Shown one piece after another: positions 1 to 7,796 of a DNA stretch of 8,697 nt; position 1 is the first letter of the stretch, and the number at the start of each line of letters is the position of its first letter. Under the pieces are notes generated by a model. The model made no database searches. It saw only the letters and a program-made list of their open reading frames with translations, and had not been told where the DNA came from. The position numbers were made by a program, and so were the translations under genes. The stretch is taken from positions 1 through 8,697 of IMG/VR virus record IMGVR_UViG_3300005977_000014; one strand, written 5' to 3'.

Positions 1-731
1 AAGCCCTCAGTTCCAGAAGGAACAATTGTAAAATCCATAACTTTGTAAAATGCATAAATATACTCTCTTGGATTTAGTCCAAATTCTGAAACAAAATGTA
101 CATTTTCAGGAACTTCAAAATCTTTAAATTGTTTATGAGAAATTATAAAGAAGTGAACTTTTTTGGCTAATTCTGGAATTTTAGTATTTATCTCCTGAAA
201 AACTTTAAGCATTAAATCCATATTTTTTCTCTTAGTTAAACCACTAACAATTCCAAATTTTACAGTATTTGGAAAATCTTTATCCAACTTTTGCTTTAAT
301 TGAATAGCTAATTTTTCAGCTTTTTCTACAATTTCAAAATTAATTCCATGGAAAACTGGAAGATCAGTTTGAAGACCGACTTCTTGAAGATTTTGAGCTG
401 TAAATTTACTATTTGGTATAAATGTTATATTTTCTAATAGATATTGATTTACAATATTTAAATTTGGAATTCCATCACATGTAGTATAAAAATACTTAAT
501 TCCGCGAAATTCATGAAATGTGTAAAGATATGGATTTAAAGATGGCGGATGAAATGGGACAAAAACAATTAATTTATCACTTTGTGGAATTAAATATGGA
601 TTTGTTGAAATTGTAACAATTTCACCATTTTTTCTGAGAACTGTAGCTATATCTTCTGCTACATTTCGAATCGAAGAATAATTCATAGTCAAAATTACGG
701 TTTTGTGGCGAACTGTGTTCGACACTTCCAT
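1..731 (-). CDS. Glycosyltransferase, GT-B fold (SIRV ORF335-like), 3' end outside the window
   Basis: Manual translation from ATG at 731: MEVSNTVRHKTVILTMNYSSIRNVAEDIATVLRKNGE...VFHGINFE...RKNMDLML...MDFTIVPSGTEG, open to base 1. The P-S-x-x-E-G motif is typical of GT4/GT-B enzymes. Rudiviruses carry this gene next to the capsid gene. Alternative ATG at 686. Confidence 0.9.
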   Translation of the reverse strand, partial: MEVSNTVRHKTVILTMNYSSIRNVAEDIATVLRKNGEIVTISTNPYLIPQSDKLIVFVPFHPPSLNPYLYTFHEFRGIKYFYTTCDGIPNLNIVNQYLLENITFIPNSKFTAQNLQEVGLQTDLPVFHGINFEIVEKAEKLAIQLKQKLDKDFPNTVKFGIVSGLTKRKNMDLMLKVFQEINTKIPELAKKVHFFIISHKQFKDFEVPENVHFVSEFGLNPREYIYAFYKVMDFTIVPSGTEG

Positions 732-737
732 GAGATT

Positions 738-760
738 TTTTTATTTGTCATGACACTAAA
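738..760. promoter_or_regulatory. Divergent promoter centred on the perfect palindrome TGTCATGACA (746-755)
   Basis: TTTTTTATT-TGTCA 17 nt before ATG 768 on +; TTTTTAG-TGTCA 19 nt before ATG 731 on -. Confidence 0.6.
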
Positions 761-767
761 AAATCAT

Positions 768-938
768 ATGCGTCAAGTTTTATATGAATGTCCAATTTGT
801 AAAATAATATACAAAAGTAGAAGCGGAATTATACATCATATAAAAAAATTCCATAAAAATATAACAATTAGGGATTGTAAAAGAATTAACACAAGAACTT
901 ACGAATATATTGAAATCAAGACTGAAGATGATGATTAA
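768..938 (+). CDS. C2H2 zinc-finger protein, 56 aa (SIRV ORF55-like), copy 1
   Basis: YECPIC-x12-HIKKFH. Start moved from GTG 705 (overlaps the glycosyltransferase) to ATG 768, which follows the TATA/GTCA motif. Confidence 0.85.
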   Translation: MRQVLYECPICKIIYKSRSGIIHHIKKFHKNITIRDCKRINTRTYEYIEIKTEDDD

Positions 939-995
939 TTTCAAGTTAAAAAGCCAAAAGTGACTTTTTTAAATGTCATTAATCAAAAAAATCAT

Positions 996-1166
996 ATGGG
1001 AATGTTTTTGTACGAATGTCCAGTTTGCGGATTCATAAGCAGAAATAGAAATAGTATGATTAATCATATAAAAAGACATAACAAAAATTTAAAATTAAGT
1101 GACTGTAAAAGGATTAGTAAAAAAACTTATGAATATATTGAAACAAAAGTAGAAGATAATGACTAA
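996..1166 (+). CDS. C2H2 zinc-finger protein, 56 aa, copy 2
   Basis: YECPVC-x12-HIKRH; same length and same DCKRI..TYEYIE.K.ED.D tail as copy 1. ATG 996 lies 17 nt after TTTTTAAA-TGTCA. Confidence 0.85.
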   Translation: MGMFLYECPVCGFISRNRNSMINHIKRHNKNLKLSDCKRISKKTYEYIETKVEDND

Positions 1167-2236: not shown

Positions 2237-2479
2237 ATGGATAAAGAATGCCGTTTAATAATAGTTTTTTTAATTTTTCTAGCTTTTATATTTTTAGCTT
2301 TAGTAATTTTGTCATTAGGAATTCTAACAAAAAATATATTAGAAATTATAATATCAGTAATTTTTGCATCTGGAATTTTTGCATTTATGTATTTAGAAAT
2401 TTATGTCATTTTTGCAGATATTTATGATGAAATTGATGAACTTAAAGCTGAAATTGAAAGATTAAAAAAGAAGAAATGA
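2237..2479 (+). CDS. Small membrane protein, two TM helices plus C-terminal coiled coil, 80 aa
   Basis: Hydrophobic stretches LIIVFLIFLAFIFLALVILSLGIL and IIISVIFASGIFAFMYLEIYVIF, then IDELKAEIERLKKKK. Confidence 0.75.
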   Translation: MDKECRLIIVFLIFLAFIFLALVILSLGILTKNILEIIISVIFASGIFAFMYLEIYVIFADIYDEIDELKAEIERLKKKK

Positions 2480-2517
2480 ATAAAAATATATTTGTCATAA
2501 AGTTAAAAGTAAAAATC

Positions 2518-2736
2518 ATGGAAAATTATGATAATTCAAATTCTAAAAATGAACAACATATTTTGAAATCAATTTTAGAAAATTGTGATGAAAATAGTTA
2601 TTTTTGTACAGATTGGTGTTGTTATATAAAATGTAACGGAAAATGGTATAGAATTGAATATTTTGACCCATTAGGAACTATGGATGATGAATATATAGAA
2701 ATTTTTGAAGATGAACCTCCAAATATTGATTCCTAA
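2518..2736 (+). CDS. Small acidic Cys-rich hypothetical protein, 72 aa
   Basis: ATG 2518 lies 20 nt after AATATATT-TGTCA; the track's start at 2476 translates the promoter. Five Cys, about 17 D/E versus 5 K/R. Confidence 0.7.
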   Translation: MENYDNSNSKNEQHILKSILENCDENSYFCTDWCCYIKCNGKWYRIEYFDPLGTMDDEYIEIFEDEPPNIDS

Positions 2737-2800: not shown

Positions 2801-3343
2801 ATGATCTTAAGTGATCGTGATTTAAAATACTATCTAGAAAAAGAATGGATAAAAATAGTGCCATATTCGGAAGAAATAGTAAGAGAAAATGGCGTAGATT
2901 TAAGAATTGGAAATCATTTTGCTAGATTGAAAAAAACAGATAAAGTATTCGAGCCAGATGATAATATAGAAGATTTTTACGAAATTGTAGATTCTTACGA
3001 AATTGTAATACAACCTCATGAACATTTATTAATGGAAACCCTTGAATATATAGAACTTCCAAACGATATTATGGCTTTTGTGAATCTACGTTCTACATAT
3101 GCTAGACTTGGAATTTCTATACCTCCAACAATTATAGATGCCGGATTTAAGGGTCAATTAACAATAGAAATTATTGGCTCAGAATTTCCAGTAAGATTAG
3201 CAACTGGAGAAAGATTTCTACATTTAATTTTCGCTAAAACATTATCTCCAGTAGAGAAACCATATCATGGAAAATATCAATATCAAAGAGGTGTAACTTT
3301 GCCAAGATTTGAAATATTTAAAAATAGTAACTATAAAAGTTAA
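2801..3343 (+). CDS. dcd: dCTP deaminase / trimeric dUTPase family protein, 180 aa
   Basis: [46 protein letters not shown] motifs of the Dcd/Dut superfamily; the SIRV homologue is described as a dUTPase. Confidence 0.92.
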
Positions 3344-3380
3344 AAGAAAAAAAATTAATAACTTAAGATAACTTTTTTTA

Positions 3381-3557
3381 TTAAAACGTAATTTTTTCAA
3401 TTTTAACTTCATCATTTTCTTTATTTCTGACATGATTATCTAAAAATTCTATAATCGCTAATCTGACAACTTCAGATCTATGAAATCTATGATTCATAGC
3501 ATAATTATCGAGTTCATCAAGGAGTTTTTCTGGAATTTTTATACTTATTACTCTCAT
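3381..3557 (-). CDS. Ribbon-helix-helix transcription regulator, 58 aa (SIRV ORF59b-like)
   Basis: Manual translation MRVISIKIPEKLLDELDNYAMNHRFHRSEVVRLAIIEFLDNHVRNKENDEVKIEKITF; CopG/RHH pattern; ATGA overlap with the upstream gene. Not in the ORF track. Confidence 0.88.
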   Translation of the reverse strand: MRVISIKIPEKLLDELDNYAMNHRFHRSEVVRLAIIEFLDNHVRNKENDEVKIEKITF

Positions 3558-3715
3558 TTTGATTGCCTCTTTTGTAAATATTCCTCTAACGCTTCCTCTA
3601 TAGCTTCAGTCATGGTAATGTTATTATTTACACAATAGATCTTTAGCCTTCTCTTTAGCTCTTTATCTATATGTATCCCAAACGTAATTCTTTCCTTTTT
3701 TGTTTTCTCCATCAT
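3554..3715 (-). CDS. svtR: SvtR-like RHH repressor, 53 aa (SIRV ORF56b-like)
   Basis: Manual translation MMEKTKKERITFGIHIDKELKRRLKIYCVNNNITMTEAIEEALEEYLQKRQSK matches the recalled SvtR pattern FGI..DK.LK.RLK.YC..NN....AIEEA..EYLQKR; SD-like GAGGAG upstream. Not in the ORF track. Confidence 0.88.
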   Translation of the reverse strand: MMEKTKKERITFGIHIDKELKRRLKIYCVNNNITMTEAIEEALEEYLQKRQSK

Positions 3716-3813
3716 TTCTCCTCAGTTTATAAACATACATTATGACAAATTTATATATTTCGAATTTTTGCACAAACTTTATTATTAAGTAATTTGTAAA
3801 TAACAGAATTGAA
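3716..3813. promoter_or_regulatory. Divergent svtR / PVAP promoter region
   Basis: ATATATAAAT-TTGTCA on - (TGACA 3743-3747); AAAC-TTTATTA at 3774-3784 on +; palindromes GTTTATAAAC 3725-3734 and TTTG-CA-CAAA 3767-3776. Confidence 0.6.
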
Positions 3814-4113
3814 ATGTCAACAATACAATATGCAGTAGAAGGATTTCTAGTACTAATGGGCGTATTAATAGGAAGCTATGTAGTCGGAGAAATAGTACAT
3901 CTTTACAATCAAAAACAAACAAATGAATCATTCCAATTAGCTATTGATCAAATGACAAAATCTACAATCTCAGCAGTTGAAAGTATTAAAGATACTACAA
4001 CTCTTGGAATTAATTCACTTTTGAACATGGATACACTTAGAGATGTAAATGCATTAGCACAGAAAAAAGCTGAACAAAATTCAAACTCTCAACAACAGTC
4101 ACAAAGTAAATAA
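3814..4113 (+). CDS. Virus-associated pyramid protein PVAP (SIRV2 P98 / STIV C92 family), virion egress
   Basis: N-terminal TM helix then GEIVHLYN.KQ.NE.F..AIDQM.KST..A.ESIKDTT..GIN.LLNMDTLRDVN, the conserved PVAP core. Confidence 0.93.
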   Translation: MSTIQYAVEGFLVLMGVLIGSYVVGEIVHLYNQKQTNESFQLAIDQMTKSTISAVESIKDTTTLGINSLLNMDTLRDVNALAQKKAEQNSNSQQQSQSK

Positions 4114-4114
4114 T

Positions 4115-4459
4115 TTATTTTTGATTTTTTAACATATAAGTTAAAACTTTTTTTATATCTTTTTTTGTTTTCGGAACTAATTGAATTCTAATATCCGAAT
4201 GTTTTGGCATTCGTTTATGAACTCTGGAATAGTCAAGTTTTTTATTCGTGAAAACTAAAACATGGTAATGAAGTCCATGTAATCTTGTTGTATATTCTTT
4301 TACGCTAAATACATGAGAATTTTTATCATGATTATAGATATATTGCCGAAATTTTTTATAGATTTTTGTCGTATCATTATAGCGATAATTCGTAGAAATT
4401 GTAACAAAATAAGTATAACTATAAAGAAAATGATAGCTAAAAACTTTTTCACAGTTCAC
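4115..4459 (-). CDS. rep: HUH endonuclease Rep (SIRV ORF119c-like), 114 aa
   Basis: Motif I FVTIST, HUH motif GLHYHVLVF, catalytic YMLK; GTG start 17 nt after TTTAAA-TGTCA. Confidence 0.92.
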   Translation of the reverse strand: MNCEKVFSYHFLYSYTYFVTISTNYRYNDTTKIYKKFRQYIYNHDKNSHVFSVKEYTTRLHGLHYHVLVFTNKKLDYSRVHKRMPKHSDIRIQLVPKTKKDIKKVLTYMLKNQK

Positions 4460-4530: not shown

Positions 4531-4803
4531 GTGAAGCGCCAAAAGAACAAATATATAGAAATTCGCATACCAAGTAAATATAAAAATATTTTTTACGAAA
4601 AAAGAGACTTAATAAAACAAGAAATTGACAAAATACTAAATGGAGAAAAACAATTTAAGCCAATAGAAAGTACAGATAACTATGATGAACGTGTTTTCTT
4701 CACAATTGATGAATTGTACTATCAAAAACTTGAAGAATTAGCTAAAAAATATAATCTCAAAATCTCAAAAATCATAAGATCCATATTCTTCAAGTTAATT
4801 TAA
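4531..4803 (+). CDS. Putative RHH DNA-binding protein, 90 aa (possibly tandem RHH)
   Basis: C-terminal RVFFTIDELYYQKLEELAKKYNLKISKIIRSIF is RHH-like; N-terminal KYIEIRIPSKYK resembles a second ribbon. GTG start; T-rich tract follows. Confidence 0.75.
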   Translation: MKRQKNKYIEIRIPSKYKNIFYEKRDLIKQEIDKILNGEKQFKPIESTDNYDERVFFTIDELYYQKLEELAKKYNLKISKIIRSIFFKLI

Positions 4804-4826: not shown

Positions 4827-4904
4827 CATGGAGAATATATTAAGCTATTAAATTCTTAAATATTTAAATTTGTCATATTTCAAACTTTTAATTCGGGAAA
4901 CAAG

Positions 4905-5306
4905 ATGGCAAGCCTGAAGGAAATAATAGATGAATTAGGTAAAACTGCAAAAGAACAGAATAAAATAGTTAGCAGAATTTTAAAGATAAAAGGATTAAAA
5001 AGACTAGTAGTACAACTAAATGCAGTTCCACAAGATGGCAAAGTAAGATATTCTATGACCATTCATAGCCAAAATAACTTTAGAAAACAGTTAGGAATAA
5101 CTGCTAATGATGCTGAAGATTTAAGATTAATCTCAGAATTTTTAAATAAATATAAAGATATTTTAGATGAATATGTAAAATTTACACCAAGAAATAATTC
5201 AATATCACAAGTTGAGGAATTAGAACTAGAAGAAAAAGAAGAAAAACAAAAAGAGGAAAAAAAGGAGAAAAAAACACAAAAGAAAAACGTAGAAGATGAA
5301 TTTTAA
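4905..5306 (+). CDS. Single-stranded DNA-binding protein (SIRV2 gp17/ORF131b-like), 133 aa
   Basis: MASLKEII...SRILKIKGLKRLVVQLNAVP...YSMTIHS.NNFRKQ.GI pattern, long charged tail ending VEDEF; first gene of the known gp17-18-19 operon. Confidence 0.88.
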   Translation: MASLKEIIDELGKTAKEQNKIVSRILKIKGLKRLVVQLNAVPQDGKVRYSMTIHSQNNFRKQLGITANDAEDLRLISEFLNKYKDILDEYVKFTPRNNSISQVEELELEEKEEKQKEEKKEKKTQKKNVEDEF

Positions 5307-7580: not shown

Positions 7581-7796
7581 ATGATAGACTACGAATTTGA
7601 CTATAACGAAATAAAAAGTGAATTGGAAAATGTGGTAAATGAGTTAATAGAAATTAAAGAAAAACTAGAAGAATTAATGAAAGTTGCTAATTATTATGAT
7701 GAACTATATGATTACTATGAATTTGCAAAAAGTAAAATTGAAGAATTAGAAGATGTGATATTTCAAATAGAAAATATAATTTATAGCTTTAAATAA
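7581..7796 (+). CDS. Small acidic coiled-coil protein, 71 aa
   Basis: Starts 6 nt after previous stop; heptad pattern; about 20 D/E versus 7 K. Confidence 0.72.
   Translation: MIDYEFDYNEIKSELENVVNELIEIKEKLEELMKVANYYDELYDYYEFAKSKIEELEDVIFQIENIIYSFK

What the first reader, a model, noticed from the sequence alone, without database searches (positions are those of the whole stretch)
3381..4113. Putative lysis-timing switch: svtR + second RHH operon head-to-head with the pyramid gene
Two RHH genes missed by the ORF track are translationally coupled (ATGA) and share a 98-bp divergent control region with PVAP that contains two palindromes. In SIRV2, as I recall, ORF56b, ORF59b and ORF98 are at separate loci; SvtR is an autorepressor and has been reported to act on late genes. 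This layout suggests a self-contained module in which RHH levels (or an RHH heterodimer) gate production of the toxic egress protein.
Basis: partly seen in the sequence, partly recalled or inferred. Interest (0 to 1): 0.62.

Follow-up and report, generated by a model that had tools for sequence, protein, structure and literature searches.

The report
Rudivirus regulator operon facing pyramid gene
In this Yellowstone-type archaeal rod virus, two small DNA-binding regulator genes sit back-to-back with the gene for the cell-bursting pyramid across a tightly conserved 98-bp double promoter; this layout is normal for the virus group, and nothing yet shows that the regulators time lysis.

Summary
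Window 3554-3715(-) is the SvtR/ORF56b orthologue. Window 3381-3557(-) is a second ribbon-helix-helix (RHH) gene overlapping it by ATGA. PVAP, the pyramid-forming egress protein (3814-4113,+), starts exactly 98 bp away on the other strand.

The second RHH is the SIRV2 gp21/ORF59b orthologue, a member of the published aCcr1 cell-cycle-regulator clade that mainly targets host cell-division genes.

The layout is not a one-off. It is the standard arrangement of genus Usarudivirus (SIRV4-11) and of about 25 distinct metagenomic relatives, and the spacer is exactly 98 bp in 24 of 25.

The spacer is two back-to-back core promoters:
- a canonical rudiviral TATA+GTC promoter for the RHH operon, collinear with the SIRV1/2 svtR promoter;
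- a BRE/TATA promoter for PVAP, collinear with the SIRV2 ORF98 promoter.

The two "palindromes" occur no more often than chance, and their sequences vary between relatives. Neither the published SvtR site nor the aCcr1 box occurs in the spacer. Some relatives have a 1.1-1.5 kb insert between svtR and PVAP, and others keep aCcr1 elsewhere, so the parts can be separated.

The lysis-switch idea is untested, not refuted. One new lead: aCcr1-type RHH genes also neighbour PVAP in SRV and STIV1.

The parts
3381..3557 (-). 58-aa RHH gene, the orthologue of SIRV2 gp21/ORF59b and SIRV9 gp19 (aCcr1 clade). It is the second gene of the operon.
   Evidence: Pfam RHH_1. It is 43% identical to SIRV2 gp21 over 58 aa and 41% identical to SRV ORF58. 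PHROG 876 'transcriptional repressor', 4e-15. SIRV9 gp19 (YP_009362571) is named as an aCcr1-clade member in PMC9976892.
3554..3715 (-). 53-aa RHH gene, the SvtR (SIRV1 gp08 / SIRV2 ORF56b) orthologue. It is the first gene of the operon.
   Evidence: Pfam 56B_RHH 2.8e-14. PDB 2KEL 6.2e-17. It is 62% identical to SIRV2 ORF56b.
3554..3557 (-). ATGA overlap: the svtR stop codon overlaps the start codon of the aCcr1-like gene.
   Evidence: Read directly from the sequence. The same 4-nt overlap (ATGA, twice GTGA) occurs in all type-A relatives.
3566..3569 (-). GAGG Shine-Dalgarno-like motif 8 nt before the start of the aCcr1-like gene, inside svtR.
   Evidence: Read from the sequence. Its function is inferred.
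3718..3723 (-). GAGGAG Shine-Dalgarno-like motif in a short svtR leader.
   Evidence: Sequence. The TGAGGA-type motif is kept in most relatives and in SIRV1.
3725..3734 (.). Perfect 10-bp palindrome GTTTATAAAC. It is a candidate SvtR auto-operator by positional homology only.
   Evidence: It lies between the GTC box and the Shine-Dalgarno motif. This is the position occupied in SIRV1 by the sequence that best fits the published SvtR consensus, with one N fewer. It is not conserved across relatives and is not enriched in related genomes.
3739..3746 (-). GTCATAAT, the rudivirus-specific 'GTC' promoter element downstream of the TATA box.
   Evidence: It is invariant in 25 relatives. The 18-mer containing it has 13 matches in SIRV2 against 2.0 expected and 4 in the window against 0.48 expected. 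The GTC element is described in PMC5569661, citing Kessler 2004.
3749..3758 (-). TATA box of the leftward svtR-aCcr1 promoter. The inferred transcription start is near 3727.
   Evidence: Pairwise identity is 0.94-0.97. It is collinear with the SIRV1/SIRV2 svtR promoters, with the same 24-nt distance from the motif to the ATG. The transcription start is inferred from the usual Sulfolobus TATA-to-start distance.
3759..3770 (.). Conserved A/T-rich spacer (TTCGAATTTTTG) between the two TATA boxes. It is the BRE side of the leftward promoter and stays with PVAP in the insertion variants.
   Evidence: Identity 0.83-0.84. It is retained upstream of PVAP in L014, L025, L033 and L034.
3771..3786 (+). 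BRE-like CACAAAC(T) plus TATA box TTTATTATT of the rightward PVAP promoter. It has no GTC element. The inferred start is near 3808, so the mRNA is nearly leaderless.
   Evidence: The TATA core has identity 0.93. It is collinear with, and similar to, the SIRV1/2 ORF98 upstream region. The transcription start is inferred.
3772..3797 (.). Inverted repeat ACAAA-N16-TTTGT flanking the PVAP TATA box.
   Evidence: The arms are the least conserved columns (0.58-0.65). Some lineages carry AGAAA/TTTCT or AGAAAG/CTTTCT at the same place, which hints at a compensatory change but is not significant.
3807..3813 (+). Conserved AATTGAA immediately before the PVAP ATG, in the probable initiation region.
   Evidence: Identity 0.86; alignment.
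3814..4113 (+). PVAP, the protein that forms virus-associated pyramids. It is the orthologue of SIRV2 P98 and STIV C92.
   Evidence: PHROG 8367, 1.4e-52. It is 92% identical to SIRV4, 66% to SIRV2 and 57% to STIV1. Metatranscriptome contigs lie on 3836-4077.

Best explanation
This locus is the normal regulatory hub of a Usarudivirus-type rudivirus.

Leftward unit. A canonical rudiviral promoter drives a bicistronic mRNA. The promoter is a TATA box at 3749-3758 plus GTCATAAT at 3739-3746. The inferred transcription start is near 3727, giving a short leader with a GAGG ribosome-binding motif. The mRNA encodes SvtR and then, through a 4-nt ATGA overlap, an aCcr1-family RHH protein. By homology with SIRV1, SvtR shuts off this promoter by binding between the GTC box and the start codon. 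By homology with SIRV2 gp21, the aCcr1-like protein acts mainly in trans on host cell-division genes such as cdvA, and may also feed back on its own promoter.

Rightward unit. PVAP is transcribed from its own BRE/TATA promoter (3771-3786) as a nearly leaderless mRNA. This promoter travelled with the gene, because it is collinear with the SIRV2 ORF98 promoter.

Spacer. The two core promoters are packed upstream edge to upstream edge, which fills the 98 bp and explains the invariant length.

Any effect of the RHH proteins on PVAP would be a proximity effect: SvtR spreading about 45-55 bp from its operator. The sequence gives no sign of a dedicated switch.

Shown: the gene identities, the overlap, the conservation, the promoter motifs and the synteny. 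Inferred: the transcription start sites, the operator position, autorepression and trans-action on the host.
For: - Gene identities.
- Synteny: the same layout is found in SIRV4-11 and in about 25 distinct IMG/VR relatives.
- Spacer: it is exactly 98 bp in 24 of 25 relatives. Its mean pairwise identity is 0.78, against 0.65 and 0.49 at third codon positions of PVAP and svtR.
- Conserved core: it is a generic promoter. The 18-mer ATTATGACAWATTTATAT is enriched in SIRV2 (13 matches against 2.0 expected) and marks the SIRV2 svtR, gp17 and gp20-21 promoters. It has four copies in the window, each in front of a gene. The GTC element is documented.
- The svtR promoter is collinear, base for base in length, with those of SIRV1 and SIRV2.
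- The PVAP promoter resembles that of SIRV1/2 ORF98.
- Promoters are separable. Insertion variants keep a promoter with each gene.
- aCcr1 is movable. Type-B relatives have aCcr1 after gp20, as in SIRV2.
- Literature: aCcr1-clade function and targets; SvtR autorepression and spreading.
- RNA: metatranscriptome contigs lie on PVAP but not on the RHH genes. This fits a strongly expressed PVAP next to a weakly expressed, possibly self-limited operon, but contig data cannot rank expression.
Against: - No transcription start site, footprint or expression time course exists for any usarudivirus. The start sites and the operator are inferred.
- There is no length change in the spacer across relatives whose flanking proteins differ by up to about 45%. 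That is stronger constraint than two independent promoters strictly need, and it could reflect cooperative protein binding across both promoters.
- SvtR is reported to repress gp30 from a site about 80 nt from its TATA box, so a reach of 45-55 bp to the PVAP TATA box is realistic.
- SIRV2 gp21 binds its own operon's promoter. The aCcr1-like protein may therefore also occupy this spacer.
- aCcr1-type genes neighbour PVAP in three lineages, which hints at selection for linkage.
Confidence: 0.55

Rival explanations
1. SvtR, alone or with the aCcr1-like protein, binds in the 98-bp region and spreads over both TATA boxes. PVAP stays low until RHH levels fall or are titrated, and this sets the time of pyramid formation.
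For: - The two TATA boxes are only about 30 bp apart centre to centre.
- SvtR autorepresses and is proposed to polymerise along DNA over about 80 nt.
- AvtR of AFV6 protects about 100 nt between two promoters.
- The spacer is invariant at 98 bp, and the region is more conserved than synonymous sites.
- The PVAP promoter lacks the GTC element carried by most rudiviral promoters, so it may be regulated differently.
- A variable inverted repeat flanks the PVAP TATA box, with possible compensatory variants.
Against: - There is no match to the published SvtR consensus in 3716-3813, even with 3 mismatches. That consensus is also uninformative: 16 hits in the window against 15.7 expected.
- The palindromes are at chance level, and their sequences vary between relatives.
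- In 5 loci (L014, L025, L026, L033, L034; L025/L026 and L034 look identical where compared) a two-gene insert puts 1.1-1.5 kb between svtR and PVAP, and PVAP keeps its own promoter.
- SIRV1/2/3 and SSRV1 form pyramids without this layout.
- PVAP transcripts rise steadily and pyramid formation is gradual in SIRV2.
Confidence: 0.22
2. Selected neighbourhood of aCcr1 and PVAP. The aCcr1-like repressor shuts down host cdvA and cell division and enlarges the cell. PVAP has been proposed to act as a CdvA analogue that recruits ESCRT-III/Vps4. Keeping the two genes together would ensure co-inheritance and coordinated dosage, with or without direct regulation through the spacer.
For: - aCcr1-type RHH genes lie next to PVAP in three different configurations: behind svtR in type-A usarudiviruses; directly upstream in SRV, ORF58 then ORF92; and directly downstream in STIV1, C92 then A61.
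- The position of aCcr1 is polymorphic among US rudiviruses. The operon position is therefore a relocation, probably derived because the alternative matches SIRV2.
- In STIV1, C92 occupies the slot beside A61 where STIV2 has an unrelated gene.
- aCcr1 proteins repress cdvA. C92 interacts with CdvB, and CdvC localises to pyramids.
Against: - The genomes are small, so chance adjacency is not rare. My own rough estimate is about 0.1 per lineage for a rank distance of 2 or less, and about 0.01-0.02 for three of six lineages. This is post hoc.
- The genes are far apart in SIRV1/2/3, in SSRV1 and in type-B relatives.
- The orientation differs in each case, so no shared regulatory design is evident.
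- aCcr1 genes occur in many virus families that lack PVAP.
Confidence: 0.15
3. SvtR and the aCcr1-like protein form an RHH heterodimer with a new DNA specificity that controls PVAP.
For: - The genes overlap and are probably translationally coupled, giving near-equimolar synthesis.
- The complex prediction scored 0.47 against a best control of 0.00. The verdict was 'weak support', with partner pLDDT of 68-69 and at least 95% contact agreement between runs. At scores of 0.60 or below, only 5 of 78 solved complexes passed, as did all 4 of the mismatched pairs that passed.
Against: - The two proteins have no detectable sequence similarity to each other.
- Solved and modelled members of both families are homodimers (2KEL; AlphaFold models in PMC9976892).
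- Any two RHH monomers may be docked generically, and the controls were not RHH proteins.
- Type-B relatives separate the two genes.
Confidence: 0.04

Closest known systems
SIRV1 SvtR (gp08, PDB 2KEL) and its autoregulated promoter
   Same: The protein is orthologous (62% identity; Pfam 56B_RHH). The promoter has the same TATA + GTCATAAT core and the same length from the GTC box to the ATG.
   Different: The stretch where the SIRV1 site lies has a different sequence here. In SIRV1/2 svtR sits directly behind the Rep gene (ORF119c) with a 24-bp gap. It has no divergent partner and no second cistron.
SIRV2 gp21/ORF59b and SIRV9 gp19, viral aCcr1 cell-cycle regulators (PMC9976892)
   Same: It is a 58-aa RHH protein, 43% identical to gp21, and its position is orthologous to SIRV9 gp19. 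Like gp21, it is the distal gene of a small operon.
   Different: In SIRV2 and in type-B relatives the gene follows gp20, not svtR. Binding to AGTATTA and the cell-division phenotype have not been tested for this protein. No AGTATTA occurs in the spacer.
AFV6 AvtR gp29/gp30 control region (Peixeiro 2013, as summarised in PMC5569661)
   Same: An archaeal-virus RHH regulator autorepresses and also controls the neighbouring gene. It covers about 100 nt between two promoters by spreading from high-affinity sites.
   Different: AvtR is a single-chain double RHH from a lipothrixvirus, and its neighbour encodes another RHH protein, not an egress protein. No footprint exists here.
Phage P22 immI region (Arc and Mnt RHH repressors at the overlapping divergent promoters Pant/Pmnt). 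This comparison comes from my own knowledge and was not checked here.
   Same: Two small RHH repressors are encoded beside a compact divergent promoter pair that controls a potentially harmful gene.
   Different: It uses bacterial sigma-70 promoters with well-defined operators, and the controlled gene is an antirepressor, not a lysis protein. Any homology is at fold level only.
SIRV2 P98 / STIV1 C92 (PVAP) loci
   Same: The PVAP is orthologous. The proximal promoter has a TATA box about 35-45 nt before the ATG and no GTC element.
   Different: In SIRV2 the upstream neighbour is the co-directional ORF73 (DUF1374), and no RHH gene is nearby.

Membership tests
SvtR / 56B-like RHH (Pfam PF21432) | Sequence match to the 56B RHH domain and to the solved SvtR structure | tested here: met
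   PF21432, E 2.8e-14, 53.2 bits against a cut-off of 27.2. PDB 2KEL, E 6.2e-17. 62% identity to SIRV2 ORF56b.
SvtR / 56B-like RHH (Pfam PF21432) | Published SvtR binding consensus (ATnnTTCAAnAnnnnnAAAATG) present in its own promoter | tested here: not met
   No match in 3716-3813 with up to 3 mismatches. The pattern is uninformative in this AT-rich DNA, with 16 hits against 15.7 expected. As printed, the consensus does not match even SIRV1 at 2 mismatches or fewer. By my reading it fits SIRV1 with one N fewer.
SvtR / 56B-like RHH (Pfam PF21432) | Binds and represses its own promoter and a late structural-gene promoter | not testable with these tools
   This needs EMSA, footprinting or in vitro transcription. 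The ORF1070 homologue is not on this 8.7-kb fragment.
aCcr1 clade of RHH regulators (PMC9976892) | Single RHH domain of about 58 aa, orthologous to SIRV2 gp21 / SIRV9 gp19 | tested here: met
   RHH_1. 43% identity to gp21 over the full length. Syntenic with, and 64% identical to, SIRV9 gp19. SIRV9 gp19 is listed as a clade member.
aCcr1 clade of RHH regulators (PMC9976892) | Binds the aCcr1 box AGTATTA, for example in the cdvA promoter | not testable with these tools
   No binding assay is possible. The motif is absent from the spacer, and its 4 copies in the window match the chance expectation of 3.15.
aCcr1 clade of RHH regulators (PMC9976892) | Overexpression blocks cell division (growth retardation, enlarged polyploid cells) | not tested
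   Published for SIRV2 gp21, STIV A61 and SMV3 gp63. For SIRV9 gp19 the paper reports reduced transformation efficiency, small colonies and growth retardation.
PVAP (P98/C92, PHROG 8367) | Sequence membership, about 90-100 aa, hydrophobic N-terminus | tested here: met
   PHROG 8367, E 1.4e-52. 57-92% identity to characterised PVAPs. The hydrophobic N-terminal stretch is visible in the translation.
Canonical rudiviral TATA+GTC promoter (Kessler 2004) | TATA box followed by a GTC element about 24 nt upstream of the start codon, recurring across the genome | tested here: met
   The svtR-side promoter at 3739-3758 matches. The PVAP-side promoter does not carry GTC.
Dedicated lysis-timing switch (regulator gating an egress gene) | Regulator operator overlapping the egress-gene promoter, conserved with it | tested here: inconclusive
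   No known operator motif was found. The inverted repeat around the PVAP TATA box is variable and at chance level. The layout is broken by inserts in some relatives. Binding itself was not tested.

The most novel reading that the evidence does not exclude
The svtR-aCcr1 operon and PVAP form a selected functional unit. The aCcr1-like repressor, with or without SvtR, occupies the invariant 98-bp double promoter. It thereby couples shutdown of host cell division (cdvA repression, cell enlargement) to the production of PVAP, which uses the remaining ESCRT machinery. The same pairing of aCcr1 with PVAP arose independently in usarudiviruses, SRV and STIV1.
Probability: 0.15. Interest if true: 0.65.

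Novelty: new member of a known kind. Interest (0 to 1): 0.36.

Why it matters
What decides when virus-associated pyramids are made and opened is unknown. A 2024 review of archaeal virus entry and egress never uses a word beginning with 'regulat'. An earlier review states that the opening signal has not been identified.

If the RHH operon did control PVAP, it would be the first known regulator of archaeal virus egress. It would also link egress to viral manipulation of the host cell cycle.

As it stands, the locus gives a compact 98-bp bidirectional template that can be tested in culturable viruses (SIRV8, SIRV9). Natural variants already exist as controls: type A, type B and insert-bearing genomes. 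On its own the window adds one more example of a genome layout already deposited for SIRV4-11.

Tried and rejected
- SvtR consensus. I scanned the window for the published consensus. It gave chance-level hits and none in the spacer. As printed, it does not hit SIRV1 either.
- aCcr1 box. I scanned for AGTATTA. Hits were at chance level, with none in the spacer and one inside PVAP at 3982-3988.
- Palindromes. I tested enrichment in the 98 bp and found none.
- Regulon search. I searched for GTTTATAAAC in the window and in three related genomes. There was no enrichment over the control, and the motif resembles a TATA box.
- Sigma-70 and intrinsic-terminator scan. It is not relevant to an archaeal virus and showed nothing above shuffles.
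- Covariation. I looked for covariation between the SvtR beta-strand (ITFGIHID versus VVFGINID) and the putative operator segment. There is no clean pattern, and the comparison is confounded by phylogeny.
- Heterodimer fold. SvtR with the aCcr1-like protein scored 0.47 against a best control of 0.00. The verdict was 'weak support', with partner pLDDT of at least 68 and at least 95% contact agreement. The mark was reached by 51 of 78 solved complexes and 2 of 108 mismatched pairs. At 0.60 or below it was reached by only 5 of the 78 solved complexes and by all 4 passing mismatches. Generic RHH-RHH docking cannot be excluded, so I make no binding claim.
- RNA evidence for transcription starts. 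Only assembled contigs were available, so no starts or ends could be seen.
- Primary papers. Guilliere 2009 and Kessler 2004 were not held. Their content is cited only through the review PMC5569661.
- STIV2 A103 as a divergent PVAP. It shows no similarity to C92.
Full report
**What the window is.** The window is an 8.7-kb IMG/VR virus fragment. It carries:
- the rudiviral major capsid protein (1254-1658, Pfam Sulf_coat_C, 1.5e-75);
- a dCTP deaminase/dUTPase;
- the Rep protein (ORF119c family);
- the gp17/gp18/gp19 homologues.

Its closest deposited relatives are the Yellowstone viruses SIRV4-11, genus Usarudivirus, at 77-85% nucleotide identity over the region.

**Check of the observation.**
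- ORFs 3554-3715(-) and 3381-3557(-) exist and overlap by ATGA at 3554-3557.
- PVAP is 3814-4113(+) (PHROG 8367, 1.4e-52), and the gap between the divergent start codons is 98 bp.
- The upstream 53-aa gene is the SvtR orthologue (Pfam 56B_RHH 2.8e-14; PDB 2KEL 6e-17; 62% identical to SIRV2 ORF56b).
- The downstream 58-aa gene is the ORF59b/gp21 orthologue (43% identity over its full length).
- The two RHH proteins have no detectable similarity to each other.
ORF56b, ORF59b and ORF98 lie at about 8.8, 12.5 and 31.7 kb.
- The 'two palindromes' are present, but inverted repeats are no more frequent in the 98 bp than in shuffled sequence: 6 against 6.96 +/- 2.6.

**What the second RHH is.** PMC9976892 defines the aCcr1 clade of RHH regulators.
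- SIRV2 gp21 and its host homologue bind AGTATTA in the promoters of cdvA and other cell-division and replication genes, and they block cell division.
- gp21 additionally binds the viral gp17 and gp20-21 promoters.
- The paper names SIRV9 gp19 (YP_009362571) and STIV A61 as clade members.
- SIRV9 gp19 is the positional orthologue of window 3381-3557.

The second cistron is therefore a viral cell-cycle regulator with documented host targets, not an uncharacterised partner of SvtR.

**How widespread the layout is.** A scan of IMG/VR with PVAP returned 43 loci. Mapping six window proteins onto them shows three states:
- Type A has dUTPase, then aCcr1 and svtR on the minus strand, then PVAP, then Rep. 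It is found in the window, in all of SIRV4-11 and in most contigs. The 4-nt overlap is present in every type-A locus.
- Type B is the same but has no aCcr1 behind svtR (L027, L029, L035-37, L039). In the one such contig long enough to tell, aCcr1 sits after gp19-gp20, exactly as in SIRV2.
- Type C has a two-gene insert of 232 and 188 aa, with no Pfam match, between svtR and PVAP (L014, L025/26, L033, L034).

The head-to-head pairing of svtR and PVAP is therefore typical of the lineage, the aCcr1 position is polymorphic, and the pairing can be broken. Bautista et al. 2017 already noted that non-central core genes are syntenic among the Yellowstone SIRVs but rearranged relative to the Icelandic ones. 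I found no paper that discusses this particular juxtaposition.

**Anatomy of the 98 bp.**
- The spacer is exactly 98 bp in 24 of 25 distinct relatives.
- Its mean pairwise identity is 0.78. Third codon positions score 0.65 in PVAP and 0.49 in svtR.
- Conservation is concentrated in three places: 3737-3771 (0.83-0.97), 3779-3785 (0.93) and 3807-3813 (0.86).

The first conserved block, read on the minus strand, is a TATA box followed by GTCATAAT.
- The 18-mer containing it is strongly over-represented in SIRV2, with 13 hits against 2.0 expected. It marks, in the correct orientation and about 24 nt from the ATG, the promoters of SIRV2 svtR, gp17, gp20-21 and other genes.
- In the window it occurs four times against 0.48 expected, each time in front of a gene.
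- This is the virus-specific 'GTC' promoter class described by Kessler 2004, as reported in PMC5569661.
- The window's svtR promoter has the same length from the GTC box to the ATG as those of SIRV1 and SIRV2.
- In SIRV1, the segment between GTC and the Shine-Dalgarno-like motif carries the sequence that best fits the published SvtR consensus. In the window, the collinear segment holds the palindrome GTTTATAAAC (3725-3734). That segment differs between lineages.

The second conserved block is a BRE-like/TATA element, CACAAAC-TTTATTATT at 3771-3786, about 35 nt before the PVAP ATG.
- It has no GTC element.
- It resembles the SIRV1/2 ORF98 upstream region in sequence and position.

With the usual Sulfolobus TATA-to-start distance (established knowledge, inferred here), the starts fall near 3727 and 3808. 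The two pre-initiation complexes would then abut at about 3767-3769. This accounts for most of the 98 bp and for why nothing can be deleted.

**Bearing on the switch hypothesis.** Evidence against, or neutral:
- No SvtR consensus or aCcr1 box occurs in the spacer.
- The palindromes are at chance level and lie in the least conserved columns.
- The conserved core is generic promoter sequence.
- In type-C genomes each gene keeps its own promoter after separation. PVAP keeps about 65 bp of upstream sequence, and svtR keeps TATA+GTC.
- PVAP-encoding viruses without this layout exist.
- In SIRV2, PVAP transcripts rise steadily, and pyramid formation is not a threshold event.

Evidence in favour:
- The total absence of length change in the spacer.
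- The short distance, about 45-55 bp, from the presumptive operator to the PVAP TATA box, set against the reported about 80 nt reach of SvtR at gp30.
- The precedent of AvtR covering about 100 nt between two promoters.
- gp21 binding to its own operon's promoter.
- A variable inverted repeat around the PVAP TATA box, with possibly compensatory variants (ACAAA/TTTGT, AGAAA/TTTCT, AGAAAG/CTTTCT).

The heterodimer idea received only 'weak support': score 0.47, best control 0.00, partner pLDDT 68-69 and at least 95% contact agreement. The mark was reached by 51 of 78 solved complexes and 2 of 108 mismatched pairs. At 0.60 or below it was reached by only 5 of those 78 solved complexes and by all 4 passing mismatches. 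The controls were not RHH proteins, so generic RHH pairing is not excluded.

**RNA data.** Two hot-spring metatranscriptomes hold parts of the region. Their contigs lie on PVAP (3836-4077) and not on the RHH genes. Contigs cannot give starts, strands or levels, so this shows only that PVAP-like RNA, or DNA carried in the library, is present.

aCcr1-type RHH genes neighbour PVAP in three lineages, each in a different configuration:
- type-A usarudiviruses (this window);
- SRV, where ORF58 lies directly upstream of ORF92;
- STIV1, where C92 lies directly upstream of A61.

In STIV2 the slot beside the A61 homologue holds an unrelated gene. The genes are far apart in SIRV1/2/3, in SSRV1 and in type-B relatives.

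aCcr1 proteins repress cdvA. C92 has been proposed to act as a CdvA analogue that recruits CdvB and CdvC. A functional reason for linkage is therefore conceivable. My rough, post hoc estimate of the chance of three such adjacencies among six lineages is about 0.01-0.02. That is suggestive only.

**Verdict.** However, the layout is the ordinary one of a known virus genus, and the second RHH belongs to a published family with host targets. The sequence evidence fits two abutting, separable promoters better than a dedicated switch.

Cross-regulation of PVAP by SvtR or the aCcr1-like protein remains an open hypothesis. It can be tested cheaply in culturable viruses, and natural variants can serve as controls.

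Noticed in passing
window 3712-3751, 3831-3869, 4162-4202, 4302-4340, 4348-4389, 4874-4909, 5072-5110: Short contigs (85-93 nt) from a hot-spring metatranscriptome consist of a 36-42 nt match to the window flanked by GCTAATCTACTATAGAATTGAAAG. I recognise this as a Sulfolobus-type CRISPR repeat, from memory only. If so, host CRISPR arrays in nature carry spacers against this region, including one across the svtR start and conserved promoter block.
   Followed up: partly
L054 308-475 (contig of L027); window 7581-7796: The aCcr1/gp21-like gene has two alternative positions among US rudiviruses: behind svtR (the window, SIRV4-11) or after gp19-gp20, as in SIRV2. In the window the post-gp20 slot holds an unrelated 71-aa ORF.
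   Followed up: yes
L025 1116-2383; also L014, L026, L033, L034: A two-gene insert lies between svtR and PVAP in some relatives. It encodes a 232-aa protein and a hydrophobic 188-aa protein, neither with a Pfam match, and it has its own TATA+GTC promoter facing away from PVAP.
   Followed up: partly
window 4531-4803 (+); L003 (SIRV2) 9477-9722: A third RHH-type gene (90 aa, C-terminal RHH_3, E 1e-3) diverges from the Rep gene. It appears to correspond to the 'SIRV4gp10 homologues' RHH cluster named in PMC9976892. A 63%-identical reading frame exists in SIRV2 between gp16 and gp17 but is not annotated in NC_004086.
   Followed up: partly
window 705-938 and 960-1166 (+): Two tandem paralogous small C2H2 zinc-finger genes lie next to the glycosyltransferase and capsid genes. 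SIRV5 and SIRV9 have a single small gene at that place.
   Followed up: no
window 2476-2736 (+): A TATA+GTC promoter match at 2484-2501 lies inside the listed ORF. The real start is therefore probably the internal ATG near 2518 (MENYD...), giving a near-leaderless mRNA.
   Followed up: no
aCcr1-like proteins of the window and of L010-L041: The C-terminal tails of the aCcr1-like proteins fall into three unrelated variants...NKENDEVKIEKITF as in SIRV2 and SRV...RTNVRMTKAMYNS, and ...RPNTTTYDS. The RHH core is conserved throughout.
   Followed up: no
L008 (STIV1) 2992-3721; L057 (STIV2) 881-1646: STIV1 C92 (PVAP) occupies the slot immediately upstream of the aCcr1-type gene A61. STIV2 has an unrelated gene (A103) in that slot and no detectable PVAP.
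   Followed up: partly
window 3344-3380 and 4113-4115: Convergent gene ends are tightly packed. Only 37 bp of T/A runs separate the dUTPase stop from the aCcr1-like stop, probably serving as terminators in both directions. Only 1 nt separates the PVAP stop from the Rep stop.
   Followed up: no
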